Below, piece by piece: positions 7,687 through 49,958 of a stretch of 64,000 nt of DNA. The translations under genes were made by a program, and so were the position numbers. The stretch lies in IMG/VR virus record IMGVR_UViG_3300025012_000027, positions 62,001-126,000 of that record. The stretch is one strand, 5' to 3'. Each line of letters opens with the position of its first letter. Position 1 is the stretch's first letter. Below the pieces are notes generated by a model. It saw only the letters and a list, made by a program, of their open reading frames with translations, searched no databases and was not told the DNA's origin.

Positions 7687-7992
7687 ATGTTTTTCTTCAA
7701 GCGACCCACTAAAACGGTTAGTGACTCTGAGTATGAATTGGTCGAACACCCGCTGGATGACGGCGGGGCTGTACCTGGTGTTCGACTACTCAAAGAACCA
7801 TACGCTGGCGTAATCGTTACAATTTCCCCTAAAGTTTCTGTAAAAGTCGTTGACGAAGAACTACGAGTGTCTTTTGACTATAATGTCGTATTCATGCCGA
7901 CAGGTATGGGTCCGATAGATCACTCAACATTCAAACCTATAATTGGCGACATTGTCGTCGACATAATGCAAAAGGATTACGATGCGACGTGA
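7687..7992 (+). CDS. 40: Head vertex assembly chaperone gp40-like
   Basis: Synteny uvsX-40-41; PYAGVIV, SFDYNVV, IGDIVVDI. Confidence 0.65.
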   Translation: MFFFKRPTKTVSDSEYELVEHPLDDGGAVPGVRLLKEPYAGVIVTISPKVSVKVVDEELRVSFDYNVVFMPTGMGPIDHSTFKPIIGDIVVDIMQKDYDAT

Positions 7993-10569: not shown

Positions 10570-11427
10570 ATGAGTAAACTAAAAATATCAGAACTATTCT
10601 ATTCGATTCAAGGAGAAGGACGCTATATGGGGGTTCCTAGCGTATTCTTAAGAACCTTTGGTTGCAATTTCAAGTGTGCTGGATTTGGGATGCCTAAAGG
10701 CGAATTGAGTTCGGACGCCGACGAGGTAGCGCATACTCATACCGCGATTGAAGCGTTTCAAACGTATAACGATTTGCCGTTAGTGAAAACCGGTTGCGAT
10801 TCATTTGCATCTTGGCATCCTGCATTCAAAGATCTTTCCCCTATGCTGACTGTGGATGCTATCGTTGATAGAGCCGTCGATCTACTACCACATAAAGAAT
10901 GGCGAGACGAGCATCTTGTTATCACAGGTGGCGAACCTTTGTTGGGGTGGCAGCGGTCTTACCCAGAACTTCTAGCACATCCTAAAATGCGTTCTTTGAA
11001 GGAACTCACATTCGAGACTAATGGCACTCAGCCGTTGAATGGTTTTTTCAAAACCGTGTTATACAGTTGGACAGAAGCCCGTACATATGACTCACTGACG
11101 TTTTCAGTTAGTCCAAAGTTAAGTTGCTCTGGAGAACCTCGTAGTGTAGCAATCAATCCCGAAGTGGTGGTTGATTATGAATTGTATGGCTACACTTACT
11201 TGAAGTTTGTAGTCGCAACTGAAGATGATATAGCAGAAGCGCTTGAAGTGACTGATATTTATCGAAAAGCTGGGTTCAAAGGCCCTGTTTATTTGATGCC
11301 AGTTGGTGGCGTGGAATCCGTATACACGCTAAATAACAGAACTGTTGCCCAGGCAGCAATCAAACATGGGCTTAGGTATAGCGATAGGCTACAAGTTCCT
11401 TTATTCAAGAATGCCTGGGCAACATGA
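10570..11427 (+). CDS. queE: 7-carboxy-7-deazaguanine synthase (radical SAM)
   Basis: ELFYSIQGEG, FLRTFGCNFKC...CDS, VITGGEPLL, FETNGT, SVSPKL, RYSDRLQ. Confidence 0.95.
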   Translation: MSKLKISELFYSIQGEGRYMGVPSVFLRTFGCNFKCAGFGMPKGELSSDADEVAHTHTAIEAFQTYNDLPLVKTGCDSFASWHPAFKDLSPMLTVDAIVDRAVDLLPHKEWRDEHLVITGGEPLLGWQRSYPELLAHPKMRSLKELTFETNGTQPLNGFFKTVLYSWTEARTYDSLTFSVSPKLSCSGEPRSVAINPEVVVDYELYGYTYLKFVVATEDDIAEALEVTDIYRKAGFKGPVYLMPVGGVESVYTLNNRTVAQAAIKHGLRYSDRLQVPLFKNAWAT

Positions 11428-11618
11428 TGAAAACTCGTGACGAAATTATCACGGACATGTGTTATGCTTGGCGACATGACTATGGCTTGGATAAATGGCC
11501 TGACGAGTTTAGTTTTAGGTCTGGTATGACCCCGGCTGAGAGAACTATCCTTTGGAACCAGATGGCTCGCCTATTTGATGATAATATATCCCCTTTTATG
11601 GAGTTTAATCAAGAATGA
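11424..11618 (+). CDS. Hypothetical protein
   Basis: ATGA-coupled on both sides. Confidence 0.55.
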   Translation: MMKTRDEIITDMCYAWRHDYGLDKWPDEFSFRSGMTPAERTILWNQMARLFDDNISPFMEFNQE

Positions 11619-12115
11619 ATCAACCAGTATCGTATAAGTATACATCAACTAAAGAATACATCGACGCATTCCCATGTGCGTATCGACAATGGCGAGCAGA
11701 CAGTCATTGCAATTCGATCCACGGATACAGTTTTTCCATGAAATTTTACTTTGGGACCAATGATCTCGACGTGCGAAATTGGGCCGCTGATTATGGTGGG
11801 TTGTCAGACCTTAAGAAAATTCTGGAGAGTCAGTTCGATCATACGTTGCTAGTGAGTTCAGATGATCCCGAGTTGGAAACTTACAAACTTCTTCAGGAAA
11901 AGAAGATGGCAAAGCTCACAATTCTACCTAAACTTGGGTGCGAAGCTCTCGCGGATATGCTGTATAAATACGTCAATGGCGTTTACATTCCAGATTTGTG
12001 GGGTCCTGGAGAATCCAACCGACTTTGGTGTCATCGAGTCGATGTGCGAGAAACTCGGAGCAACATGGCATTTCGAGAAGGCCATCGCGAATGGAACGAA
12101 GATCTGTTCGCGTAA
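11615..12115 (+). CDS. queD: 6-carboxy-5,6,7,8-tetrahydropterin synthase
   Basis: HCNSIHGY, DYGGL, FDHTLL, GCE, VRET. Confidence 0.92.
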   Translation: MNQPVSYKYTSTKEYIDAFPCAYRQWRADSHCNSIHGYSFSMKFYFGTNDLDVRNWAADYGGLSDLKKILESQFDHTLLVSSDDPELETYKLLQEKKMAKLTILPKLGCEALADMLYKYVNGVYIPDLWGPGESNRLWCHRVDVRETRSNMAFREGHREWNEDLFA

Positions 12116-12142
12116 ATATACATTCAGACAATAAAGGAACAT

Positions 12143-12457
12143 ATGAATACTAGACTATTAACCCCGCCAGAATACTGTCCGGATGCTCTAGCAACGGACG
12201 TTGGTTGGATCAACCCAAAGAATGGTGAGATCTTAGTGATCGTAAAGGATTTGCGGAATCGTCTCACATTACAGGCAGCCGAACTCGCAAAGGCGTTGGC
12301 GACAATGGAAGCCGTTCCAGAACTTGAGCCAACCACGGTTGATGATGTTGAAGTCGTCAATCAGCCCGAGACCTCATCTAGTGATGCAGTAGAAACCACC
12401 AACAAACCAGGGCGTCGCGGGCGTCCTCGTAAAATGACTTCAAAGGAGACAATTTAA
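12143..12457 (+). CDS. Hypothetical protein with C-terminal AT-hook-like RRGRPRK
   Basis: AAGGA RBS and TAAATA at 12113; GWINPKNGEILV motif. Confidence 0.6.
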   Translation: MNTRLLTPPEYCPDALATDVGWINPKNGEILVIVKDLRNRLTLQAAELAKALATMEAVPELEPTTVDDVEVVNQPETSSSDAVETTNKPGRRGRPRKMTSKETI

Positions 12458-13137
12458 TGAATTATGGTAAGTGTGACCCAGAATTGGGTAAGCGAGTTCG
12501 AGCGTATTTGATGTTGCAGGGGGTCGAGTCTCCAATCGACTATTCTGTGTATGACAGTACGACCGCTGCATCTAAAATTGAGGTGGTAGAACATCACATG
12601 AAAGCTGCTCTTGAAATCATGGGGTTCGACCTCACAAACGACTCTGTTCAAAACACCCCCAAGCGAATCGCGAAGATGTGGGTATCCGAGATCATGAGTG
12701 GCCTCGACTACAACAACTTTCCAAAGATTATGACGTTTGAGAACAAGTTCAAAGCATCTGGGATGGTTGTTGAGCGTGATGTTAAGTCAATGAGCCTGTG
12801 CAGCCATCACCTAGTTACTATTGACGGCGTTGCTACTGTTGCATACATTCCTAAAGAGCGGGTTATTGGTCTTAGTAAGATCAATCGTGTAGTTGACTAT
12901 TTTTCCAGACGCCCTCAAGAAGCCGAGCGTTTGACGTTGCAGATCTTCCATGCTCTTGAGTATTTGTTGGGAACTGAAGATATCGCCGTGTTCTTGACAG
13001 GCACGCACTTCTGCGTTCGTTCACGTGGCGTGCAGGATATCAATTCAAGCACATCAACCGTTAAGTTGGGTGGCGGATTCTTGAACGATCCAATGCTGCG
13101 CAAAGAATTCTACGACGTGGTGCATTCAAAGGCGTAA
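12457..13137 (+). CDS. folE: GTP cyclohydrolase I
   Basis: TPKRIAKM, SLCSHHL, IGLSKINR, RRPQEAERLT, HFCVRSRGV. Confidence 0.97.
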   Translation: MNYGKCDPELGKRVRAYLMLQGVESPIDYSVYDSTTAASKIEVVEHHMKAALEIMGFDLTNDSVQNTPKRIAKMWVSEIMSGLDYNNFPKIMTFENKFKASGMVVERDVKSMSLCSHHLVTIDGVATVAYIPKERVIGLSKINRVVDYFSRRPQEAERLTLQIFHALEYLLGTEDIAVFLTGTHFCVRSRGVQDINSSTSTVKLGGGFLNDPMLRKEFYDVVHSKA

Positions 13138-13149
13138 TTAAGCCACCTT

Positions 13150-13175
13150 GATCGGCAGAAATGCCGATCTTTTTT
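13150..13175 (+). terminator. Rho-independent terminator after folE
   Basis: GATCGGCA-GAAA-TGCCGATC followed by T6. Confidence 0.85.
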
Positions 13176-13186
13176 GACTATTCATA

Positions 13187-14515
13187 ATGAAAACTTTCAA
13201 TAAGCGTATTGGCTTCATCATCTCGGCTCAGCATCTTATTCCTCACGGCGGCATCGGACAATTCGCCAAGGGGTTGATTGAGATGCTAGACGAGTATCAA
13301 ATAGATATCATCCTTGATAAGGCTCCAGCATCATCTGAGTTCGTTGAATTATTGGCCGGTAAAGACAACGTTAAGCTAATATACCCCCCACAGCCGCTTT
13401 CGAGCCAAAAACATACTAAGGTACATGCCTTCAGCGAAACGTTGAATCTAGAGCGGATCATTAACTTTCGCGATAGTTTGATGCTTGCTCTGCAGACGCA
13501 GATCTACGATACTATCATTATCAACACGCCTGAAGCACTATTTTCTACATATGCTCTAGGCATTCAAAAGTTCGTTCAAATCGTATTCTATACGCATAAT
13601 GAGAATCTAGTGTTCAAAGATGCTTCATTCGCGGGGGTGTTCAATGACAGCTATGACGAGATCATAGGACAGAGTATGCGATCTGATGGGATCACCGTGG
13701 GAACTCAGACACCCAGAAACCTCGATGAGTTGGTAGGCATCAAAAGTAAGGCATGGTTACCTATGCCCATCCCTGAAAGGGATCTACTCACTCCAAGCAT
13801 TATCGAAAAATCTGGGGTGCTGTTCATCGGTCGATGGGAAGAACGAAAGAACCCCAAAGAGTTCCTGCGGCTGATTGAAGAAACTGGATTGCCTGCAAAG
13901 GTTATGACGAACGAAAACGGTGCTAAGAGTTTTGAAGCAGCTCTTAGTAAGTTGGGCGTGCCGTATGAGATCAAAGCATCTATCATCGGTAAAGAAAAGG
14001 TAGATTTCATTAAGTCAGCGAAAGTGTTCTATATGCCATCAAAGAGCGAGAGCTATGGGTTTGCTCTGATGGAAGCAATTGGACACACGCATTCAATCGT
14101 TCTCGAAGAATATCCGTGGCATAAGAACTTTGACCCGACGTTTATTAACGTATCGGCCAAGAAAGATGTTGCATCTTTGACAAAACGATTGTATAATACG
14201 CCGGTACATACGGCGAATATTGATTATGTACGATCACTAGACGATCAGTGTAAGTCTATCTGGGTTGACTTCATTGAGTCGTTTAACCCAAAGCAATCAA
14301 CCTCAAATTCGGCTAACATTACCAAACATGATGAAGTGCTATATGCAGACTTCATATCATCGTTGGGTCGGTTTGCTAGTATCGAGGATGTAATTTCTGT
14401 GCTAAGCAATCGGCATAAATTCACAGTGTCACATTCCAAAGAAGGAACCTTTCTCTCAAAGAGTGGAAAGACGATTCAAAAGTCTGAAGGCATTTCATTC
14501 GACGACATATTCTAA
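13187..14515 (+). CDS. GT-B glycosyltransferase (GT4-like)
   Basis: HGGIG, VLFIGRWEERKNP, MPSKSESYGFALMEA (E-x7-E). Confidence 0.88.
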   Translation: MKTFNKRIGFIISAQHLIPHGGIGQFAKGLIEMLDEYQIDIILDKAPASSEFVELLAGKDNVKLIYPPQPLSSQKHTKVHAFSETLNLERIINFRDSLMLALQTQIYDTIIINTPEALFSTYALGIQKFVQIVFYTHNENLVFKDASFAGVFNDSYDEIIGQSMRSDGITVGTQTPRNLDELVGIKSKAWLPMPIPERDLLTPSIIEKSGVLFIGRWEERKNPKEFLRLIEETGLPAKVMTNENGAKSFEAALSKLGVPYEIKASIIGKEKVDFIKSAKVFYMPSKSESYGFALMEAIGHTHSIVLEEYPWHKNFDPTFINVSAKKDVASLTKRLYNTPVHTANIDYVRSLDDQCKSIWVDFIESFNPKQSTSNSANITKHDEVLYADFISSLGRFASIEDVISVLSNRHKFTVSHSKEGTFLSKSGKTIQKSEGISFDDIF

Positions 14516-15763
14516 ATGATAAAAGATATACATTACATCGCGTCCGGAATGTCCTACACGAGAATCAATTCTCCGAGGAACTACGAGAACCCAGAAAATT
14601 TGCAGTTCATTAATGATACTTTCAGAAAGATCAGTGATAGTGCAACCAGACATGACTTCGGCATACTGTTCAACGCATTCACTGAATCTGCTTTTGGCGA
14701 ACGGTTCTCGAAGTATAATGGGCACAAATTTACACACGCCGACTCAGGTGGCTTGCAAGTAATTACTCAAGGTAAGACGATCACGCCGGCATTGAAAGAC
14801 GCCGTATATGCTGTTCAAGCTAAGTGGTCTGATCTGGGGATGTGCTTCGATGAGATTCCAATCGGAATGACTGGAACAACTTCGGGTAGAAATGACGTAA
14901 CGAATCGTTGGTATAAGTCAGACGATCTGGAACACTATGCTAGGCTGACTGGTCGAAACATTGCTAGACAGATTGAAGTTTACCATAAACTAGATTCAAA
15001 GTGTAAGCCAATTCTCATTGCTCAAGGAAACTGTTATGACAGTTACATGCGCTGGGTAGATTATATTATGGATGAGATTCCTGCATCCGACCGTCAATAT
15101 GTCGGCGGTGTTGCTATGGGAGCTGCTGCTCTTGGCACAGGCACCCTCGAAGACATCGAGCGAGCATTTATCTTCTCACAATTGCAGATCGACGTCAAGC
15201 ATCTACACGTGCTGGGAGTTGGTTCTGTAAAACGACTATATCCGTATTTGGTGTTCCAAGATTCGGGTCTGTATAAAGACATCACATTATCATATGACAG
15301 CACTAGCCATACTTCTGGAGGCGAACTTGCAAACTATTACACCGAAGATTTCAAACGTCTTTCGTTTACTCGTCAGTATTCGAGACACTATGAAAAGATT
15401 TTTAATGAGATTGCTGGGTTCATTGACGTTTCTGATTTGACGCCTCGAGACTTTCATGAGATCATGAACAGTGGATACACAAAGTATGTCGAGGAATTGA
15501 ATAAAAAAGACTTTGACTTTTTGCGTTGTCGTTTAGGTATTATTTTCAGAATGATCCATAATTTTATCAACCACGTTGAACACGTTATGGCAAGTAAAGA
15601 GAACATGATTGAAGATGCGATGCAGCATAACCTGCATGGTCAGATTAAGTTCTTGTATGGAGTGAAAGATAAGAATGACTTCGATGCTTGGAACTCGCAT
15701 TTCAAACGTACCGTTAAGTCAAATCGTGTGCAATCTGGACAATCTTTAGAATTGGAGTTTTAA
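14516..15763 (+). CDS. dpdA: DNA 7-deazaguanine transglycosylase (TGT fold, DpdA2-like)
   Basis: ADSGGLQ, CFDEIP, IAQG, HLHVLGVG, SYDSTSH; no C-terminal CxCxxC; clustered with queE/queD/folE. Confidence 0.85.
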   Translation: MIKDIHYIASGMSYTRINSPRNYENPENLQFINDTFRKISDSATRHDFGILFNAFTESAFGERFSKYNGHKFTHADSGGLQVITQGKTITPALKDAVYAVQAKWSDLGMCFDEIPIGMTGTTSGRNDVTNRWYKSDDLEHYARLTGRNIARQIEVYHKLDSKCKPILIAQGNCYDSYMRWVDYIMDEIPASDRQYVGGVAMGAAALGTGTLEDIERAFIFSQLQIDVKHLHVLGVGSVKRLYPYLVFQDSGLYKDITLSYDSTSHTSGGELANYYTEDFKRLSFTRQYSRHYEKIFNEIAGFIDVSDLTPRDFHEIMNSGYTKYVEELNKKDFDFLRCRLGIIFRMIHNFINHVEHVMASKENMIEDAMQHNLHGQIKFLYGVKDKNDFDAWNSHFKRTVKSNRVQSGQSLELEF

Positions 15764-43608: not shown

Positions 43609-44457
43609 ATGTTTTTAGTTATTGTTAGTTTGTTGGGGTCGTTGGTCCTGGCGGTTGGATTATACGCAGTTCTTGACTTTCGAGCGTTGTATTCTGGAAT
43701 TGCGGGGATTGCTGTGTTCGTGATTGCTTTGTTGGTGGGCAGCTTTACCGTTATCAGCGCTGGTCACACTGGAGTACAGGTTACTCTGGGAGAAGTTAAT
43801 ATCGTTCCGTTGACTGAGGGGGTTCATTTAGTTAACCCGATTAGCTCGGTGAAAGATGTCGATGTAAGGCTGCAGAAAGCAGAGCTGAAAGGAGCCAATG
43901 CTGGGACCAAAGATTTGCAGGTGGTGCATACTGATATCGTGGTGAATTACCGATTGAATGCACCAAAAGTTCCTCATATCTACAAAGAATTTGGACTCAA
44001 CGTTGATGAGAAAGTTCTTGGCCCGGGCATCAATGAAGCGTTCAAGAGCGTCACTGGACACTTTACCAGTGAAGAATTGATCACGAAACGAGATATCGTG
44101 AGTCAAGAAATTCTCGAGCATTTGAAGACTAAGATGGCTCCGTTTAATATCGATGTTAGTGGGATCAGTTTGGTAAACTTTGGATTCAGTCCGGAGTATC
44201 AGAAAGCCATCGAAGCCAAGGTTATTGCTACACAATCAAAGTTGAAAGCTGAACAGGATCTTGCACGTATTGAAGTTGAGGCGCGTAGTCGAATTGCTCA
44301 AGCTAAGGGCGAAGCTGAAGCGATCAGTATCCAAGCTCAGGCGATTCAATCAAATGGCGGGGCTCAGTACGTGCAACTTCAAGCCATCGAAAAGTGGAAT
44401 GGGCAGCTTCCAACGACTGTCTTGAGCGGTAGTGTCCCGTTTGTAAATATCAAATAA
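43609..44457 (+). CDS. SPFH/band 7 (prohibitin-like) membrane protein
   Basis: Two TM helices, TKDLQVV, AIEAKV, AKGEAEA, IEKWNGQLP. Confidence 0.92.
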   Translation: MFLVIVSLLGSLVLAVGLYAVLDFRALYSGIAGIAVFVIALLVGSFTVISAGHTGVQVTLGEVNIVPLTEGVHLVNPISSVKDVDVRLQKAELKGANAGTKDLQVVHTDIVVNYRLNAPKVPHIYKEFGLNVDEKVLGPGINEAFKSVTGHFTSEELITKRDIVSQEILEHLKTKMAPFNIDVSGISLVNFGFSPEYQKAIEAKVIATQSKLKAEQDLARIEVEARSRIAQAKGEAEAISIQAQAIQSNGGAQYVQLQAIEKWNGQLPTTVLSGSVPFVNIK

Positions 44458-44476: not shown

Positions 44477-44869
44477 ATGAAGCTCTTCTACGCTTGTATT
44501 TTAACTCTGGTAAGCATGACATCATATGCTCAGGAGTGGGTACCGTTATCGCAATCAGGTGATATCTCCTACGAGATCCTCGCTGGGTCTATTAGAGTTA
44601 TCAAGGCGGAAAAAGACTCCGTGGTGGTTGGTACTGGACGCGTCGTAACCCTAACTGATAATACTATTACCGCCGAACTGTGGGCAGTGCCAATCGCCCA
44701 TTGTAGGGTTAAGCGGGGCGTACTAGTAGTGCTTGATGTCTTGGGCGAGGTCAAAAGTCGACATAGCTTTGTATATGGCCTAGGAACTGTTGCTGCAGAT
44801 GTAGCAGAAATCATGTGTCGCGTCGCGTTGGACGCTCAAACTAGCAAACCCCCGAAAGTGAATGTATGA
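44477..44869 (+). CDS. Secreted hypothetical protein
   Basis: Signal peptide ending SYA; two Cys. Confidence 0.6.
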   Translation: MKLFYACILTLVSMTSYAQEWVPLSQSGDISYEILAGSIRVIKAEKDSVVVGTGRVVTLTDNTITAELWAVPIAHCRVKRGVLVVLDVLGEVKSRHSFVYGLGTVAADVAEIMCRVALDAQTSKPPKVNV

Positions 44870-45420
44870 CCACTGTATATGATTATTTTAGTTCTATTGG
44901 CCGGGCGATGACCGCATCTGAATACTACGGTTGGGATTGTTATGGTCCGACTGCAAGGGTTGTAGACCACTGGCGACAAGGTGATAATGAGTTAACGGCA
45001 TGCTGTGTTTTTGATTCTGTTACATCGGTAGTGTATGAACTTGATCTATGTATGGTTGCAGAAAGGACTGCTCTTCGCTGGATAAATCCAGAGTATGAAA
45101 ATACATATCTAGCAGAGGCTGAGAATCGACAAATCTCTGATGTTGCTTGGGACGACGTCGAGTTTCAACGAGTTTCGTCTGCGGATACCATGCTGTCTCT
45201 TATACGCAAAGTAGTCGATGATCCATCAGTCACGTTGTCAGATGCGGCATCTGCATTGGATAACCCAGTCGACACATCTGAGATTCGGCTTGAACTTACA
45301 GAAGATGAGATGTTCAAATTGATGAAGATGGCCCATGAACATGACGTCAGTTTAAATCTGTTTGTTAGTTTGATCTTGCAGAAATATGTTGATGAATATC
45401 AGGAGAACAATAATGGCTAG
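44866..45420 (+). CDS. Conserved phage hypothetical protein
   Basis: SEYYGWDCYG...RWINPEY...AWDDV...LMKMAHE.D.SLN. Confidence 0.7.
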   Translation: MTTVYDYFSSIGRAMTASEYYGWDCYGPTARVVDHWRQGDNELTACCVFDSVTSVVYELDLCMVAERTALRWINPEYENTYLAEAENRQISDVAWDDVEFQRVSSADTMLSLIRKVVDDPSVTLSDAASALDNPVDTSEIRLELTEDEMFKLMKMAHEHDVSLNLFVSLILQKYVDEYQENNNG

Positions 45421-45730
45421 GTCGGTGATTATGATGACGGATGGTGTTGAAGTTAAGAAAGTCCCGATCGGATATTCTTGGACGGTGCTTTTCTTCAGCG
45501 GATTTCCGTGCTTGTTTAGGCAAGATTGGGTGTGGGGAGCAGTTCTAATCCTGTGCAATCTCTTTAGTTATGGTATTGTGGGCATCGTATGCTCGTTCTT
45601 CTATAACAAAGTTTATGCTAAGACCCTAGTGGATCGAGGATTCTATATCCACCATTTGCCGCCAACTGAATCAAACGAGTCAATCCTCGCATACTTAGGT
45701 TACTTGAAATTTCCGCATTCGAAAGTTTGA
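45413..45730 (+). CDS. DUF2628-like membrane protein
   Basis: VPIGYSWT..FF..FP.LFR.DW...FYNK.Y. Confidence 0.65.
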   Translation: MARSVIMMTDGVEVKKVPIGYSWTVLFFSGFPCLFRQDWVWGAVLILCNLFSYGIVGIVCSFFYNKVYAKTLVDRGFYIHHLPPTESNESILAYLGYLKFPHSKV

Positions 45731-45832
45731 TGGTTGGTTGGGCTCTTAAATAGGCTCTACGGAATAACGTGTTGAATTCATGATTTAGGTTTATACTCAT
45801 AAAACGGATTAACGTGTAGAAAAGGATTCGAT

Positions 45833-46480
45833 ATGACAAAAGAACGCTTCGGGGTGGCTGAACTCATCCTTCGGGAGGTTTGCGAGATGGACCCCGATGA
45901 CCCGGAGAAGAGCGACACCATTTGTATTGATGTGTCCACCTTGAAGCGGGTTATTGACGCCCACATTAGTGAGACGGACGAGCGCCACGGGCTGGACAGC
46001 GACACTCGCGTCTGCTTCTATGAGCAGGATTTTTACGTCCTGTCGAACTTCAGCTCGTTCAATCTTGTTGGCGGGTTCTATGGAAGCCCCCAGTCTGATG
46101 GCATCACATTCGCTACCAGTGAGCACGCCTATCACTGGCATAAGTTCCAGCCGACCGACAGCGATTTGGCCGATGCCATTCTGTTCGCGCCGTCTGCTCA
46201 CGACGCCTTTAAGCTTGCCGAGCGCAACAAGGTAAATCGTTGGGACCGATGGGACGAATTCAAGGTGGAAATCATGCGCGACATCCTGCGAGCCAAAGTG
46301 ACCCAGCACGAATACGTGCGCCGAAAGCTCCTGGCGACAGGCGACCGCGAACTGGTTGAGAACTCGTGGCGCGATGACTTTTGGGGGTGGGGACCAACCC
46401 AGGATGGCGCAAACATGCTGGGCAAGCTTTGGATGGAAATCAGAGCCGAAATCCGCGCAAAGGATACCCCTGACAATTGA
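45833..46480 (+). CDS. NADAR (YbiA-family) hydrolase
   Basis: LSNF, TSEHAYHWHKF, AKVTQH, LLATG, LVENS..D.FWG, GANMLGKLWMEIR. Confidence 0.92.
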   Translation: MTKERFGVAELILREVCEMDPDDPEKSDTICIDVSTLKRVIDAHISETDERHGLDSDTRVCFYEQDFYVLSNFSSFNLVGGFYGSPQSDGITFATSEHAYHWHKFQPTDSDLADAILFAPSAHDAFKLAERNKVNRWDRWDEFKVEIMRDILRAKVTQHEYVRRKLLATGDRELVENSWRDDFWGWGPTQDGANMLGKLWMEIRAEIRAKDTPDN

Positions 46481-46483
46481 TGG

Positions 46484-47950
46484 ATGACTGACATCCTCGA
46501 CCTTAAAGGCTGGACGGTGCTCTCCAAGTCTCAATCCGATGGTGAATACGTGATTGAGGCCGAGTACACCATTCAGCCCGCCAACTGCCCAAAATGCGGG
46601 GTTGTTGACACTCCATACAAGCATGGCGTAAAGCCCATCAGGTATCGCGACAGCCCCATCAGGGGTTCCGCTGTGGTCATCCTGGCCAACGTCCAGAGGT
46701 ACAGGTGCAAGCACTGCAAGGAGACGTTCCTTCAGCCATTGGAAGGCATTTACCCTGATATGAGGATGACACAGCGCTGTGTTGAGTACATTGAAACCCA
46801 GTGCCTTCGGGACACCTTTGTTCGGATTGCCGAGCATATTGGCTGTGATGACAAGACTGTAAGGACCGTTGCTGGCACTTACATTGACTCCATGAATGCC
46901 AAGTTCAAACCCTGGCTTCCTGAGTGGCTGGGCATTGATGAAACACAGATTGACGGCGAACTCCGATGCATCATCACTGATGTGGTCAACCGTAAGCCGG
47001 TGGATATGCTGCCCAATCGTGACAAGGTGTCGGTCACGGCATGGCTGTACCAGTTCAAAGACCGGCGCACCGTCAAGGGATTGGCCATTGACATGTGGCG
47101 TCCATATAAGGATGCAGCCCAAGCAGTGTTCCCCGGCCTGCCTGTAGTCATTGACAAGTTCCATGTAGTCAAGATGGCCAACAAGGCTTTGGAGGACATT
47201 CGCATTGCCCTTGCCAAAGACCAGCCCAAGGCAGTCGGCAAGGACTGGATGAGGCGCAAGGCACTGCTGCGGATGCGGTACAAGAATCTGGATGAAAAGG
47301 GCCGGTTTGCCCTCAGCATGTGGCTGGACAACGAACTGGCTCTCAAAGTCGCTTACGACCTCAAAGAAGCCTTCTATGACATCTACGATGCCCCTACCAA
47401 GGCAGAAGCTGGAACCCGGCTGGATGCTTGGCGCAACTCCATTCCCGCAACCATGAAGAAGGGGAAAAAGAGCTTTGCGCCCCTCATTACCGCCACGAAG
47501 AACTGGCGAGAAGAGATTCTTGCCTTCTTTGACCACCCCATCAGCAACGGGTACACAGAGGCTCTGAACGGCGTTGCCAAGGTAACCAATAGGCAAGGCA
47601 GGGGCTACAGCTTTGAAGTCCTCAGAGCCCGCGTTTTGTTCTCCAAGATTTCCAGAGTCCCTGTTACTGAAGAGGATGAGGTAACGGAAGTAGAGATGCC
47701 AGAACCCGAACAGGTTGAGGTAGTCATCCATAACCCAGCCCGTACCGTGCGCCACATGCTGCTTTACAAGTACAAGAACAGGTGTCAGTCCTGTCTTGGA
47801 GTGTTTCCCCCATCCGAGCTTTATGTCGCTCGAATGGGTGTCTTCCTTGAGGATGAACCAATGAAAAACAGGACGTTGATGTGTGCCCCTTGCAAAGAGC
47901 GTTTCCACACAGATGGAATTAAGCATGTTCATTCAACTTCCACACCTTAA
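46484..47950 (+). CDS. ISL3-family transposase with C-terminal Cys-rich extension
   Basis: CPKCG...RYRCKHC, LGIDE, IDMWRPY, VIDKFHVV, SNGYTEALN, GRGYSFEVLRARVL. Confidence 0.95.
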   Translation: MTDILDLKGWTVLSKSQSDGEYVIEAEYTIQPANCPKCGVVDTPYKHGVKPIRYRDSPIRGSAVVILANVQRYRCKHCKETFLQPLEGIYPDMRMTQRCVEYIETQCLRDTFVRIAEHIGCDDKTVRTVAGTYIDSMNAKFKPWLPEWLGIDETQIDGELRCIITDVVNRKPVDMLPNRDKVSVTAWLYQFKDRRTVKGLAIDMWRPYKDAAQAVFPGLPVVIDKFHVVKMANKALEDIRIALAKDQPKAVGKDWMRRKALLRMRYKNLDEKGRFALSMWLDNELALKVAYDLKEAFYDIYDAPTKAEAGTRLDAWRNSIPATMKKGKKSFAPLITATKNWREEILAFFDHPISNGYTEALNGVAKVTNRQGRGYSFEVLRARVLFSKISRVPVTEEDEVTEVEMPEPEQVEVVIHNPARTVRHMLLYKYKNRCQSCLGVFPPSELYVARMGVFLEDEPMKNRTLMCAPCKERFHTDGIKHVHSTSTP

Positions 47951-47995
47951 TCCGCAGAGCCCTTAAATAAAAGAGAATACTTCAGGGACCATACT

Positions 47996-48772
47996 ATGTC
48001 ACAAGATACACTCGTAACCGAATCCGCCATTGCATATATTATGATGCAAGAATCAATTTTGCTTGAATCTCGATTAGATTACCTAAAGGCAAATACTCCT
48101 CCATTGTCTACGGATCATGATACTACGGCTATTCATAAAGATACACCAAGCATCATCCAGCACTTTGCGGATAATGCTGATCCAACCCCAAACAAGCAAC
48201 GCACGCAATACATCGTTGGATTGTATCGCGCTAAGAAGATTCGACAAGAAGATGCGCCTAGAATTAAAGAAGCTTTGTCGTCATTTGAAAAATACAAACA
48301 CAAATTAGATCCATCAGAGAAACAACTCACCGTGTCTGCATATCCAACGGTTGCTAGTATTGAAGATAAAATGGTCCCGCATGTGGGCACCATGGCAACA
48401 AAACGTGAAGCTGAGCGCAATCTAAATCAACCCGGCCACGAGTTGAAGTACGATGATGAGAACATCTCGATATATCATTTGAAAGACAAAGAGACTTCCC
48501 AGAATTTGTATGGTGGCGGTCATCAACGTGGCGGTACCGGTACATCATGGTGCACTGCTGCTAGATCCAAAGATTGTATGTTTGATCAATATGCAAAAGA
48601 TGGACGATTACACGTATTGCATGATAAAAAGACTGGTAGTGTGTATCAATACCACACTAAATCTGCGTCGTTTATGGATGCTAAAGACAACGAGATTTCA
48701 CCGGAAGATTTCAAAGCAATTGCTCCAAGTTTTCATAAGGCCATTCTTTCTAATCCCGATCTGTTAAAATAA
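47996..48772 (+). CDS. Late hypothetical protein with GTSWCTA motif (PcfJ-like), possible internal head protein
   Basis: TAAATA at 47964; ILLE leader; ADPTPNK, EDAPRIK, WCTA, YQYH...FMDAKD. Confidence 0.65.
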   Translation: MSQDTLVTESAIAYIMMQESILLESRLDYLKANTPPLSTDHDTTAIHKDTPSIIQHFADNADPTPNKQRTQYIVGLYRAKKIRQEDAPRIKEALSSFEKYKHKLDPSEKQLTVSAYPTVASIEDKMVPHVGTMATKREAERNLNQPGHELKYDDENISIYHLKDKETSQNLYGGGHQRGGTGTSWCTAARSKDCMFDQYAKDGRLHVLHDKKTGSVYQYHTKSASFMDAKDNEISPEDFKAIAPSFHKAILSNPDLLK

Positions 48773-49365
48773 TGAATGTACGCAAACTTTTTCTAGCCAA
48801 GTACGGGGCTAAAGACCATCTCGATGAATTGGTTAATGATACTGATTTGGTTGTTAGGGATGCTGTAGCTAAAAATCCATCCGCAACGAAAGAACATCTA
48901 GATACGCTCGTTAATGATAAATCCGAGTATGTTAGAGAATCTGTAGCCAGTAACCCAAATGCCTCGAAAGAGCATCTAGATAAACTAGCGGCGGATAATC
49001 ACTTCTATGTTAGAGCGGCAGTAGCTCAGAATCCAAACGCCTCGAAAGAGCATCTAGATAAACTTGTTAACGATATAGACTGGCATGTTAGACGCGATGT
49101 AGCTCGGCATCTAAACGCCTCGACCGAACATCTAGATAAGCTGGTTAGTGATGCAGCCGAGTATGTTAGACACGCTGTAGCTAAGAATCCAACTGCCTCG
49201 AAAGAGCATCTAGATAAACTTGTTAACGATGATGATTGGCATGTTAGAGTCGCTGTAGGTCGGCATCCTAATGCTACTAAAGATCATCTAGATAAGCTGG
49301 TTAGTGATGATAACAGTGATGTTAGACGTGACGCGAAAGAAAATCTAACGAAAAGAAAACTATGA
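48772..49365 (+). CDS. HEAT/LRV-type repeat protein 1 (7 x 24 aa)
   Basis: Repeat HLDKLVxDxxxxVRxxVAxNPNAxKE. Confidence 0.85.
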   Translation: MNVRKLFLAKYGAKDHLDELVNDTDLVVRDAVAKNPSATKEHLDTLVNDKSEYVRESVASNPNASKEHLDKLAADNHFYVRAAVAQNPNASKEHLDKLVNDIDWHVRRDVARHLNASTEHLDKLVSDAAEYVRHAVAKNPTASKEHLDKLVNDDDWHVRVAVGRHPNATKDHLDKLVSDDNSDVRRDAKENLTKRKL

Positions 49366-49958
49366 CCGATCAACGACACGAATTTCTGGCTAAGTATGGT
49401 GCTAAAGAGCATCTAGATAAGTTGGTTACTGATAAAAGCGAGTATGTTAGAGAATCTCTGGTATCAAATCCCAGCATAACTAACGATCATCTAGATAAGT
49501 TGGTTACTGATGAACACCCGGGTGTTAGACACGCTGTAGCTAGAAACCGAACTGCTTCGAAAGAACATCTAGATAAACTGGTTACTGATAAAAACGAGTA
49601 TATTAGACGTAGTGTAGCTCGGAATCCAAATGCAACTAAAGATCATCTAGATAAACTGGTTACTGATAAAAGCGAGTATGTTAGAGAAGCTGTAACCAAG
49701 AGTCCAAATGCTTCGAAAGAACATCTAGATAAACTAGTTAACGATAGAGATTGGCATGTTAGAGAATCTGTAGCTAGTCATCCAAATGCAACTAAAGATC
49801 ATCTAGATAAGTTGGTTACTGATGAACACTGGGGTGTTAGACGTGCGGTAGCTAGTAGTCCAAATGCTTCAAAAGAACATCTGGATAAGTTGGTTACTGA
49901 TGAACACGTATATGTTAGCCGTGTCGCGAAAGAGAATCTAGCGAGTAGAAAACTTTAA
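49362..49958 (+). CDS. HEAT/LRV-type repeat protein 2 (7 x 24 aa)
   Basis: Same repeat; shared FLAKYGAK start and AKENL..RKL end. Confidence 0.85.
   Translation: MTDQRHEFLAKYGAKEHLDKLVTDKSEYVRESLVSNPSITNDHLDKLVTDEHPGVRHAVARNRTASKEHLDKLVTDKNEYIRRSVARNPNATKDHLDKLVTDKSEYVREAVTKSPNASKEHLDKLVNDRDWHVRESVASHPNATKDHLDKLVTDEHWGVRRAVASSPNASKEHLDKLVTDEHVYVSRVAKENLASRKL

What the first reader, a model, noticed from the sequence alone, without database searches (positions are those of the whole stretch)
45745..47969. Intact ISL3 element in a lytic phage, carrying NADAR cargo and inserted into a late promoter
Seen: IRs, a perfect 8-bp TSD (CTTAAATA), and a sub-terminal IR copy near 45804-45820. The TSD contains the TAAATA late promoter, so the downstream late gene keeps its promoter and the cargo gains one; the left flank also begins GGCTCT like the IR. 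Known: IS elements are uncommon in virulent phages, and NADAR enzymes remove DarT1-type guanine ADP-ribosylation from DNA. Inference: a transposon-delivered anti-DarT gene, notable in a phage that itself modifies guanines.
Basis: partly seen in the sequence, partly recalled or inferred. Interest (0 to 1): 0.7.

Follow-up and report, generated by a model that had tools for sequence, protein, structure and literature searches.

The report
Cargo-swapping transposon carrying NADAR in phage
A complete 2.2-kb ISL3-type jumping gene carrying a NADAR enzyme gene has landed exactly on a late-gene promoter of a 216-kb T4-like groundwater phage, and it belongs to a little-known transposon lineage that lives largely in phages and rapidly swaps a single passenger gene, usually one that modifies or repairs DNA.

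Summary
Window 45753-47961 is an intact 2,209-bp ISL3-family element. It has 24-nt inverted repeats, a subterminal repeat, a perfect 8-bp target duplication (CTTAAATA), a NADAR gene and a full transposase gene.

The duplicated 8-mer is a real phage promoter motif. It is intergenic in 15 of 18 genome copies and sits 24-38 nt upstream of virion genes. The insertion is not an assembly artefact: three assemblers agree, and both junctions recur in other samples.

New findings:
- The same NADAR element (98-99% identical) also sits in an inovirus and, in truncated form, in a family of temperate phages.
- The element belongs to an ISRso21-like ISL3 subgroup in which one slot, between the left end and the transposase gene, holds a different gene in almost every member. 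Cargoes include DNA methyltransferases, DpdA, a PAPS-reductase-like protein and an HNH endonuclease.
- Transposases up to 98.9% identical carry unrelated cargo.

The NADAR is YbiA-like with its catalytic residues conserved. An anti-ADP-ribosylation (anti-DarT-like) role is plausible but untested. The phage also has a second, native NADAR. The claim that the phage modifies guanines is only partly supported: FolE, QueD-like and radical-SAM genes are present, but no transglycosylase was found.

The parts
45386..45730 (+). Upstream phage gene (114 aa, small membrane-like protein). The element lies 22 nt after its stop codon.
   Evidence: ORF list; phrog_4915, function unknown.
45745..45752 (+). 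Left copy of the 8-bp target duplication CTTAAATA, which is a copy of the phage's late-type promoter motif. It now faces into the element.
   Evidence: Sequence; motif enrichment and spacing; the genes behind the motif are virion genes.
45753..45776 (+). Left terminal inverted repeat (IRL), GGCTCTACGGAATAACGTGTTGAA.
   Evidence: I1. The same end is found in 37 viral and 46 metagenome contigs. In run X10 the element's sequence ends exactly at 45753.
45804..45821 (+). Subterminal direct copy of the inner part of the IRL, probably a second transposase-binding site. Homology between family members ends just after it, so it marks the left edge of the cargo slot.
   Evidence: D9, I5; conserved in all 24 aligned members; homology break-points.
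45833..46480 (+). Passenger gene: a YbiA-like NADAR protein of 215 aa, with a roughly 55-aa N-terminal extension. E97, K104 and E176 are at the catalytic positions.
   Evidence: PF08719 E 1.4e-30; PDB 2b3w E 1e-15 and 8bau E 2e-8, with alignments; conservation across 34 homologues.
46472..46483 (+). Short conserved motif before the transposase gene (GACAATTGATGG). It is the remnant of an inverted copy of the subterminal repeat (TTCCACACGACAATCCGG in other members) and marks the right edge of the cargo slot.
   Evidence: 9 of 24 members; joints at 46472 and 46482 in run X10, where other cargo replaces NADAR.
46484..47950 (+). ISL3-family transposase, 488 aa: Zn ribbon, HTH, DDE domain, and a C-terminal extension of about 100 aa with two CxxC pairs. 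The frame is intact.
   Evidence: Pfam. Against the inovirus copy there are 7 synonymous and 0 non-synonymous differences in 167 codons. The extension is shared by L002, L003 and ISRso21.
47938..47961 (+). Right terminal inverted repeat (IRR). It overlaps the end of the transposase gene.
   Evidence: I1. In run X10 the element's sequence ends exactly at 47961.
47962..47969 (+). Right copy of the target duplication CTTAAATA. This promoter-motif copy stays 26 nt upstream of the next gene.
47996..48772 (+). Downstream phage gene (258 aa, function unknown) that keeps the promoter motif at the usual distance.
   Evidence: no Pfam or PHROG match.

Best explanation
SHOWN:
- Window 45753-47961 is a recently inserted, structurally complete and probably autonomous ISL3-family insertion sequence of the ISRso21-like subgroup, in a 216-kb T4-like, apparently virulent groundwater phage.
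- It inserted into an AT-rich 8-mer that is also the phage's late-type promoter motif. The 8-bp duplication leaves one motif copy in front of the downstream phage gene and places another at the left end, pointing into the element.
- The element has a fixed architecture: IRL, spacer, subterminal repeat with a ribosome-binding site, one passenger ORF, transposase, IRR.
- In this subgroup the passenger is exchanged far faster than the transposase diverges. Cargoes are mostly DNA-modification genes typical of phage accessory regions.
- The NADAR-carrying version has entered at least three unrelated phage types.

INFERRED:
- The NADAR is an ADP-ribosyl-nucleobase glycohydrolase that removes guanine ADP-ribosylation made by DarT1-like or other ADP-ribosyltransferase defences. 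It would act as an orphan antitoxin-like counter-defence for whichever phage carries it.
- In this phage it is transcribed by read-through from upstream genes and, late in infection, from the duplicated promoter motif.
- Cargo exchange happens by recombination in the two conserved flanks: about 70 nt at the left end, and the transposase gene on the right. How a new gene is first captured is unknown.
For: Anatomy and family:
-.
- Relatives have the same ends and perfect 8-bp duplications: L002, L003 and 24 further insertions, and ISRso21 in Ralstonia with a SAM methyltransferase passenger and the duplication GGAATAGT.

Promoter:
-.
- The genes behind the motif are a virion structural protein, scaffold, tail sheath, head closure and a baseplate-like protein.

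Real insertion:
- The IMG, ENA-MEGAHIT and Logan assemblies of SRR1658465 agree.
- The left junction recurs in a second groundwater sample and the right junction in a sediment metagenome (records 21 and 17; L138).

Spread of the NADAR element:
- Inovirus L051/L053: 98.4% nt identity, flanked by rolling-circle Rep and Zot genes.
- Temperate phages L140-L149 with a diversity-generating retroelement (DGR), from at least 10 samples.
- An isolate-like run, X10.

Cargo turnover:
- Transposases 98.9%, 95.5% and 91-95% identical carry unrelated cargo.
- Flanks of the viral-contig copies encode terminase, portal, capsid, tail, integrase and Zot proteins.

NADAR function:
- Catalytic E/K/E are conserved.
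- All NADAR classes tested hydrolyse guanine-ADPr in vitro (PMC11125620, PMC11543638).
- Divergent orphan phage NADARs neutralise DarTG1 (PMC11257639).
- Close homologues sit in prophage accessory regions beside an Acb2/Tad1-type gene, and some are fused to a Lar restriction-alleviation domain.
- DarT genes occur in 18 of 301 sampled Burkholderiales, the order of the element's closest bacterial carriers.
- The transposase is under purifying selection: 7 synonymous and 0 non-synonymous changes.
Against: - No activity, expression or transposition data exist.
- The NADAR is YbiA-like, and E. coli YbiA and T4 gp30.3 failed to rescue DarT1 toxicity in cells (PMC11125620).
- No DarT or other ADP-ribosyltransferase is linked to the element.
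- The phage already has its own NADAR, 29% identical, so the new copy may be redundant.
- A late promoter is the wrong timing for a defence that acts on replicating DNA.
- No sigma-70-type promoter was detected in the left end.
- About half of the cargoes have no recognisable function.
- The sample of family members came from a search seeded with one IRL pattern, mostly in viral collections. The phage association and the DNA-modification theme are therefore not unbiased estimates.
- No empty-site allele was found, so the age and frequency of the insertion are unknown.
Confidence: 0.6

Rival explanations
1. Selfish hitch-hiker. The element jumped into the phage during an infection of a host that carries it, and survived only because an intergenic AT-rich promoter site is one of the few harmless targets. 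On this reading the NADAR gives this phage no benefit, and the cargo matters, if at all, for the element or for prophages and bacteria elsewhere.
For: - The phage already has a native NADAR.
- ISL3 elements of this group prefer AT-rich 8-mers (68% A+T in 27 duplications). Intergenic DNA is only 8.5% of the genome, so survivorship alone predicts such a site.
- Related jumbo phages lack this gene neighbourhood, so the region is accessory.
- The NADAR shows 5 amino-acid changes in 10 nucleotide differences between copies, which looks like relaxed constraint, though the numbers are small.
Against: - The insertion is the only form seen in three samples from two studies.
- The same NADAR cassette is retained in three unrelated phage types. 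One is a truncated, immobile copy kept in at least 10 samples, which argues that the NADAR itself is selected in phages.
Confidence: 0.3
2. Metabolic NADAR. The cargo is a YbiA-type N-glycosidase acting on riboflavin-pathway intermediates or other small molecules, with no role on DNA.
For: The best solved relative is E. coli YbiA. Source annotations read 'ribA/ribD-fused uncharacterized protein' or 'N-glycosidase YbiA'.
Against: - YbiA itself hydrolyses guanine-ADPr in vitro (PMC11125620).
- This clade sits in prophage accessory regions next to anti-defence genes and is sometimes fused to Lar.
- Its sister cargoes in the same slot are DNA-modifying enzymes.
Confidence: 0.07
3. Assembly chimera. 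Bacterial transposon reads were wrongly joined into a phage contig.
For: The GC content jumps from about 42% to about 54%, and the source is a metagenome.
Against: - A perfect 8-bp duplication brackets a complete element with phage DNA on both sides.
- Three different assemblers give the same sequence.
- Contigs from two other samples cross each junction with no mismatch.
Confidence: 0.01

Closest known systems
ISRso21 (ISL3 family) of Ralstonia solanacearum, as annotated in CP052103
   Same: - The same left and right ends, the same subterminal repeat and an 8-bp duplication.
- One passenger ORF (a SAM-dependent methyltransferase) directly upstream of, and abutting, a transposase with the same C-terminal Zn-ribbon extension.
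- 73% nt identity over the transposase gene.
   Different: The cargo is different (a methyltransferase, not NADAR). It sits in a bacterial megaplasmid between housekeeping genes, not in a phage.
AdfN (T4 gp30.3) and the orphan phage NADARs of Bas32/Bas60 that neutralise DarTG1 (PMC11257639)
   Same: A stand-alone NADAR-superfamily gene in a phage, with no linked toxin. The proposed role is removal of guanine ADP-ribosylation from phage DNA.
   Different: - The gene here is YbiA-like, with Glu at the position where T4-type NADARs have His (PMC11543638).
- It is carried inside a transposon and is a second NADAR in this genome.
- Its activity is untested.
ISL3 elements with passenger genes, such as ISPpu12 (from my own knowledge of ISfinder; not checked here), and mobile insertion cassettes of IS231
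   Same: An insertion sequence whose inverted repeats also enclose non-transposition genes. Transposase-less derivatives carry only cargo (here L052, L042 and L048).
   Different: Here there is a single defined slot with very fast cargo replacement between nearly identical transposases. The cargo is dominated by DNA-modification genes, and many copies lie in phage genomes.
Integron gene cassettes
   Same: One defined position in which unrelated single genes replace each other, expressed from a shared upstream region.
   Different: There is no integrase and there are no attC sites. The slot is bounded by transposase-binding-like repeats, and the whole unit moves by DDE transposition.

Membership tests
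ISL3 family insertion sequence | DDE_Tnp_ISL3 transposase with an N-terminal Zn ribbon and HTH | tested here: met
   PF01610 E 5e-55 over 240/240 profile positions; PF14690 E 1e-11; PF13542 E 2e-4, which is below the gathering score.
ISL3 family insertion sequence | Terminal inverted repeats beginning GGCTCT and an 8-bp AT-rich target duplication | tested here: met
   24-nt IRs, 83% complementary. CTTAAATA is duplicated perfectly. In 27 independent insertions of relatives the duplications are perfect and 68% A+T.
ISL3 family insertion sequence | Ability to transpose | not testable with these tools
   Indirect evidence only. The frame is intact, and differences from another copy are all synonymous. 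Near-identical copies lie at different sites.
ISRso21-like subgroup (defined here) | IRL GGCTCTRCGGAATAACGTGT, a subterminal direct repeat about 45 nt inside, one passenger ORF abutting the transposase gene, and a C-terminal CxxC...CxxC extension of the transposase | tested here: met
NADAR superfamily, YbiA-like branch | NADAR domain with a conserved Glu, Lys and second Glu (P. nicotianae E43 and E125; E. coli C7 E88 and K95) | tested here: met
   PF08719 E 1.4e-30. E97, K104 and E176 align with these residues in 8bau and 2b3w. E97 and E176 are invariant and K104 is at least 90% conserved in 34 homologues. Residue roles are from PMC11543638.
NADAR superfamily, YbiA-like branch | Hydrolysis of guanine-ADP-ribose on DNA | not testable with these tools
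   All NADAR classes assayed were active in vitro (PMC11125620), but this protein has not been assayed. The ligand docking job was not folded.
DarG1-type antitoxin (DarT1-linked NADAR) | Encoded next to a DarT1 toxin; Asp at the E. coli C7 D171 position | tested here: not met
   There is no toxin gene in or beside the element. Glu is present at the equivalent position, the YbiA-type signature (PMC11543638).
AdfN (T4 gp30.3-type phage NADAR) | Clusters with T4-superfamily NADARs; His at the P. nicotianae E125 position | tested here: not met
   Glu176 is at that position. The closest relatives are bacterial and prophage YbiA-like proteins at 56-77% identity.
T4-type late promoter | A short AT-rich -10-like motif, without a -35 element, upstream of late (virion) genes | tested here: met
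   Of 39 TTAAATA copies, 27 are intergenic and mostly 24-38 nt before a start codon. Five of ten downstream ORFs tested are virion proteins and none is a replication gene.
T4-type late promoter | A gp55-type late sigma factor and mapped transcription starts | not tested
   No gp55 search was run and no RNA data are available.
7-deazaguanine DNA modification system in the host phage | FolE, QueD, QueE and QueC plus a DpdA/TGT-type transglycosylase | tested here: inconclusive
   FolE is present (E 7e-53), with a PTPS/QueD-like gene (4e-15) and a weak radical-SAM match (3e-6, below cut-off) at window 10570-13137. No QueC or TGT was found. The DpdA searches found nothing, but their controls were also silent. 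tblastn with a DpdA protein found nothing.

The most novel reading that the evidence does not exclude
The ISRso21-like ISL3 elements are a phage-adapted gene shuttle. A DDE transposon with one dedicated cassette slot, bounded by internal transposase-binding repeats, picks up and exchanges DNA-modification and counter-defence genes (NADAR, DpdA, orphan methyltransferases and others). It then spreads them between unrelated phages (myovirus, temperate siphovirus-like phage, inovirus) that meet in the same hosts. In this way a virulent phage can gain a counter-defence gene in a single transposition. The many cargoes of unknown function would then be a ready-made list of candidate anti-defence genes.
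Probability: 0.4. Interest if true: 0.85.

Novelty: new variant of a known kind. Interest (0 to 1): 0.72.

Why it matters
Virulent phages are thought to tolerate transposons poorly (PMC3429520), and they usually gain counter-defence genes by recombination with other phages.

Here a complete transposon brings a candidate anti-ADP-ribosylation gene into a T4-like phage at a site where the 8-bp duplication preserves the promoter it hits. The same cassette has reached an inovirus and a temperate phage.

The wider lineage swaps one passenger gene between nearly identical transposases, and that gene is often a DNA methyltransferase, DpdA or a similar enzyme. If this holds up, it is a new route for horizontal spread of phage counter-defence genes.

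It would also have two practical uses. The unknown cargoes are a source of candidate anti-defence genes. The element is also a marker that links uncultured phages to their hosts, because a phage can only acquire it inside a cell that carries it.

Tried and rejected
- Megablast of the region against phage and plasmid collections found nothing. Only distant blastn found ISRso21.
- The search for an empty-site allele failed. The downstream 258-aa gene has no relatives in IMG/VR. Of 61 related jumbo-phage loci found through the Band_7 gene, only one has the upstream gene and none has the same neighbourhood. No skipping joint was seen in contigs of three runs.
- A DNA search of 400 sampled Burkholderiales genomes found no close copy.
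- No sigma-70-type promoter was found in the left end.
- The orientation of insertions relative to flanking genes showed only a weak co-orientation trend: 10 against 4, p 0.09, with crude ORF calls in GC-rich DNA.
- The ADP-ribose docking job was not folded by the tool, so it gives no evidence.
- The idea that GGCTCT in the left flank reflects a target preference was rejected, because no other target shows it.
- DpdA, QueC and TGT searches in the phage were negative or uninformative.
- Literature searches found no description of this subgroup, of ISRso21, or of an ISL3 cargo slot in phages. The library is incomplete and ISfinder could not be consulted.
Full report
**1. What is in the sequence**

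- The window is bases 62001-126000 of a 216,115-bp IMG/VR virus record. The record was assembled from a groundwater metagenome, run SRR1658465 of PRJNA268031.
- Between a 114-aa gene ending at 45730 and a 258-aa gene starting at 47996 lies a 2,209-bp block, 45753-47961. Its GC content is 51-58%, against about 42% on either side.
- The block ends in 24-nt inverted repeats: GGCTCTACGGAATAACGTGTTGAA and its imperfect complement, 83% complementary.
- It carries a second, direct copy of the inner 18 nt of the left repeat at 45804-45821.
- It is bracketed by a perfect direct repeat, CTTAAATA, at 45745-45752 and 47962-47969.
- Inside are two + strand ORFs separated by 3 nt.
  - The first is a 215-aa NADAR protein (PF08719, E 1.4e-30).
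  - The second is a 488-aa transposase with the Zn-ribbon, HTH and complete DDE domains of the ISL3 family.
- The element is single-copy in the phage.

**2. The insertion is real**

- A Logan contig of 10,701 bp covers 44800-48900 with no difference.
- An ENA MEGAHIT contig of 213,375 bp from the same run has the same gene order.
- Contigs from another groundwater sample (X4, 45660-45997) cross the left junction without a mismatch. Contigs from a sediment metagenome of a different study (X3, 47409-47995; also L138 from SRR944699) cross the right junction without a mismatch.
- No contig joins 45752 to 47970. However, contigs drop rare variants, so the frequency of an empty site is unknown.

**3. 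The target is a late-type promoter**

- In the whole phage genome CTTAAATA occurs 18 times, 15 of them in the 8.5% of the genome that is intergenic (p 6e-14). TTAAATA occurs 39 times, 27 of them intergenic. These copies are nearly always on the strand of the next gene and 24-38 nt before its start codon.
- Ten ORFs behind such motifs were scanned against PHROGs. Five are virion proteins: a structural protein, head scaffold, tail sheath, head closure and a baseplate-wedge-like protein. None is a replication gene.
- The phage has a T4-like DNA polymerase, a topoisomerase II large subunit and ribonucleotide reductase. No tyrosine integrase was found.
- The motif resembles the T4 late promoter TATAAATA (established knowledge). 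Reading it as a late promoter is therefore well supported. No gp55 search and no transcript mapping were done.
- Because the 8-bp duplication equals the 8-bp motif, the downstream gene keeps a copy at the native 26-nt distance. A second copy abuts the left end and points into the NADAR and transposase genes.
- The family prefers AT-rich 8-mers (68% A+T in 27 duplications), and intergenic promoters are among the few harmless sites in a genome that is 91% coding. Target preference plus survivorship is therefore enough to explain the location.
- The GGCTCT in the left flank is not seen at any other target and is best taken as chance.

**4. The family**

- The closest transposases in bacterial genomes are in a freshwater betaproteobacterial MAG (75% identity) and in Paraburkholderia saeva (64%).
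- Both elements have the same ends, the same subterminal repeat and perfect 8-bp duplications (CAAAATAT, ATAGCTTT). Each has a different ORF where NADAR sits here.
- The named element ISRso21 of Ralstonia solanacearum has the same layout, with a SAM-dependent methyltransferase as passenger and the duplication GGAATAGT.
- A scan for the left-end sequence GGCTCTRCGGAATAACGTGT found 37 IMG/VR contigs and 46 metagenome contigs.
- Scripted analysis of these loci gave two classes of element:
  - full elements of 1,855-2,358 bp;
  - transposase-less derivatives of 370-1,114 bp.
- Together they amount to 27 distinct insertions with perfect 8-bp duplications.
- In all 24 aligned full elements the layout is the same:
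  - IRL;
  - a spacer of about 25 nt;
  - the subterminal repeat, ending in GGAAAGG-like ribosome-binding sequence;
  - a passenger ORF starting about 10 nt later;
  - the transposase start codon at, or within a few nt of, the passenger's stop.

**5. The cargo slot**

- The passenger differs in almost every element. An all-against-all comparison found almost no similarity between cargoes.
- Recognisable cargoes:
  - NADAR (this window, L053, L140-149);
  - DpdA (L061);
  - D12-class N6-adenine methyltransferase (L091);
  - C5-cytosine methyltransferase (L101/L118);
  - N6/N4 methyltransferases (L102, L103);
  - Dam (L076);
  - another DNA methyltransferase (L059);
  - a PAPS-reductase-like protein (L095);
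  - an HNH endonuclease (L109);
  - a sulfatase-modifying-factor-like protein (L087);
  - N4 gp49-family protein (L052);
  - two PHROG families of unknown function (L003, L044).
- The remaining cargoes, roughly half, match nothing.
- Transposase similarity does not predict cargo.
  - L091 and L102 have transposases 98.9% identical but different methyltransferases.
  - L038 and L046 (95.5%) differ completely in cargo.
  - L003, L045, L061, L066 and L103 (91-95%) carry five unrelated cargoes.
- DNA homology between such pairs covers element positions 1 to about 70, and then resumes at most 20 nt before the transposase start.
- In 9 of 24 elements the right edge of the slot is an inverted copy of the subterminal repeat (TTCCACACGACAATCCGG). 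In the window its remnant is GACAATTGATGG at 46472-46483.
- One isolate-like sequencing run (X10) holds the NADAR version together with two variants in which exactly 45822-46472 or 45826-46482 is replaced by other sequence. Cargo variants therefore co-exist in one organism.
- I infer that exchange occurs by recombination in the two conserved flanks. How a new gene is first captured is unknown.

**6. Association with phages**

- Large ORFs flanking the elements in the IMG/VR contigs match terminase large subunits, portal, major head, head-closure and tail proteins, integrases, replication initiators and Zot-like proteins. These copies lie in real phage genomes, mostly temperate or filamentous.
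- The subgroup is not confined to phages: ISRso21 lies between pdxH and trpC.
- The pattern hit 37 of 2.9 million viral contigs but only 46 of 241 million metagenome records, some of which are the same contigs. This suggests enrichment in viruses. It is not a controlled estimate.

**7. The NADAR cassette travels**

A copy 98.4% identical over 1,234 nt lies in IMGVR_UViG_3300014202 contigs L051/L053.
- The flanks encode a rolling-circle replication initiator, a Zot-like protein and minor coat-like proteins, so the host is an inovirus. They share nothing with the window's phage.
- In the transposase gene the two copies differ at 7 nucleotides and at none of 167 amino acids. In NADAR they differ at 10 nucleotides and 5 amino acids.

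A second context is a family of temperate phages with integrase, a Cox-like regulator, lysozyme and a diversity-generating retroelement, seen in at least 10 samples.
- Here the first 995 nt of the element (left end, NADAR and an 88-aa transposase stub) are kept.
- They are flanked by a TAAAAAAG repeat, with no right inverted repeat.
- The loose ends in run X10 match this prophage.
- An immobilised copy that retains NADAR argues that the gene, and not only the transposon, is maintained in phages.

**8. What the NADAR may do**

- The protein is closest to E. coli YbiA (PDB 2b3w, E 1e-15) and to the P. nicotianae NADAR (8bau).
- E97, K104 and E176 align with the residues shown to matter for guanine-ADP-ribose hydrolysis. 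The Glu at 176 marks the YbiA-type branch, where DarT1-linked NADARs have Asp and T4-type NADARs have His (PMC11543638).
- Published work relevant to function:
  - All NADAR classes tested remove ADP-ribose from guanine in vitro, but YbiA and T4 gp30.3 did not rescue DarT1 toxicity in cells (PMC11125620).
  - A YbiA-like protein is the antitoxin of the unrelated toxin YarT (PMC11125620).
  - T4 AdfN and divergent orphan NADARs of Bas32 and Bas60 do neutralise DarTG1 during infection (PMC11257639).
- Context supports a phage-accessory role.
  - Homologues 56-77% identical are abundant.
  - One in Variovorax sits in a Mu-like prophage between the portal and Mu-F genes, beside an Acb2/Tad1-family gene.
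  - Another sits in a prophage early region.
  - Some are fused to a Lar restriction-alleviation domain.
- DarT genes occur in 18 of 301 sampled Burkholderiales.
- An inovirus carrier fits this picture, because DarT enzymes act on single-stranded DNA (PMC11543638).
- Against a simple benefit here, the phage has its own 154-aa NADAR outside the window (G000 159420-159803, 29% identical). The duplicated motif would also give late, not early, expression. Read-through from the co-directional upstream genes is possible, since no terminator was predicted.

**9. The 'guanine-modifying phage' remark**

- The window encodes GTP cyclohydrolase I (12457-13137), a QueD-like PTPS (11615-12115) and a weak radical-SAM match (10570-11427). 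These are the first steps towards 7-deazaguanines.
- No QueC, TGT or DpdA could be found. The remark is plausible but not established.

**10. Verdict**

- The element is a new member of a catalogued IS family, and phage NADARs are a known counter-defence. Neither part is new in kind.
- Three things are new:
  - a complete transposon delivers such a gene into a virulent T4-like phage at a promoter that the duplication preserves;
  - the same cassette occurs in three unrelated phage types;
  - the lineage behaves as a one-slot cassette carrier whose cargo, often DNA-modification genes, turns over rapidly.
- I found no description of this in the searchable literature. ISfinder could not be consulted.
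- Function, expression and mobility remain to be tested.

Noticed in passing
outside the window: G000:C1:159420-160282 (locus L120:1480-2282, - strand): The phage has a second, native NADAR gene (154 aa, phrog_1017, 29% identical to the transposon copy). It overlaps by 4 nt with an upstream 113-aa ORF (phrog_4887, function unknown), so the two look like an operon.
   Followed up: partly
window 10570-14515: A cluster of a radical-SAM-like gene, a QueD-like PTPS gene and GTP cyclohydrolase I, followed by a 442-aa ORF with a weak glycosyltransferase match and two large ORFs with no match. This is a possible 7-deazaguanine or other purine-derived DNA modification pathway that lacks a recognisable QueC and transglycosylase.
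   Followed up: partly
L140:5921-6923 (also L141-L149, and run X10): A truncated NADAR element of 995 bp: left end, NADAR and an 88-aa transposase stub. It is flanked by the direct repeat TAAAAAAG but has no right inverted repeat. It lies between the integrase and cox-like genes of a temperate phage that carries a diversity-generating retroelement. How a deletion ended exactly at the old right boundary is unexplained.
   Followed up: partly
L051:1-6531 and L053: The inovirus contig has element sequence at both ends, which suggests a circular genome of about 8.6 kb that is one quarter transposon. Its first 127 nt join an internal transposase segment directly to the right end, which is either a deletion variant or an assembly-graph artefact.
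   Followed up: no
L091, L102, L095, L056, L076, L050: the 20 nt before the transposase start (window remnant 46472-46483): An inverted copy of the subterminal repeat (TTCCACACGACAATCCGG) lies just upstream of the transposase start codon in 9 of 24 elements. The cargo is therefore bracketed by an inverted pair of transposase-binding-like sites that lack the GGCTCT tips.
   Followed up: partly
outside the window: G000:C1:7111-7165, 7783-7837 and 15355-15410: Three copies of TTAAATA are followed by a nearly identical leader of about 45 nt (GTATGAGTAACTAATTGGATACCTTATGCAACTAACTCTAGAAGA). This is a repeated promoter plus gene start, probably of paralogous genes.
   Followed up: no
window 48772-49958: Two tandem paralogous genes (197 and 198 aa), made of leucine-rich-repeat-variant/HEAT-like repeats with a recurring 'KEHLDKLV' unit, lie directly downstream of the insertion.
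   Followed up: no
window 43609-44457: A Band_7/SPFH-family membrane protein is conserved at 60-77% identity in about 60 IMG/VR contigs, several of them 170-354 kb long. It is a useful marker for this group of large phages, but the genes downstream of it are not syntenic.
   Followed up: partly
L220:4485-6100 (Variovorax paradoxus Mu-like prophage): A NADAR homologue sits in a small cluster with an Acb2/Tad1-hairpin-family gene and a DUF4406 gene, between the Mu portal and Mu F genes. DUF4406 also lies near the truncated NADAR element in L140. This may be a recurrent accessory module.
   Followed up: no
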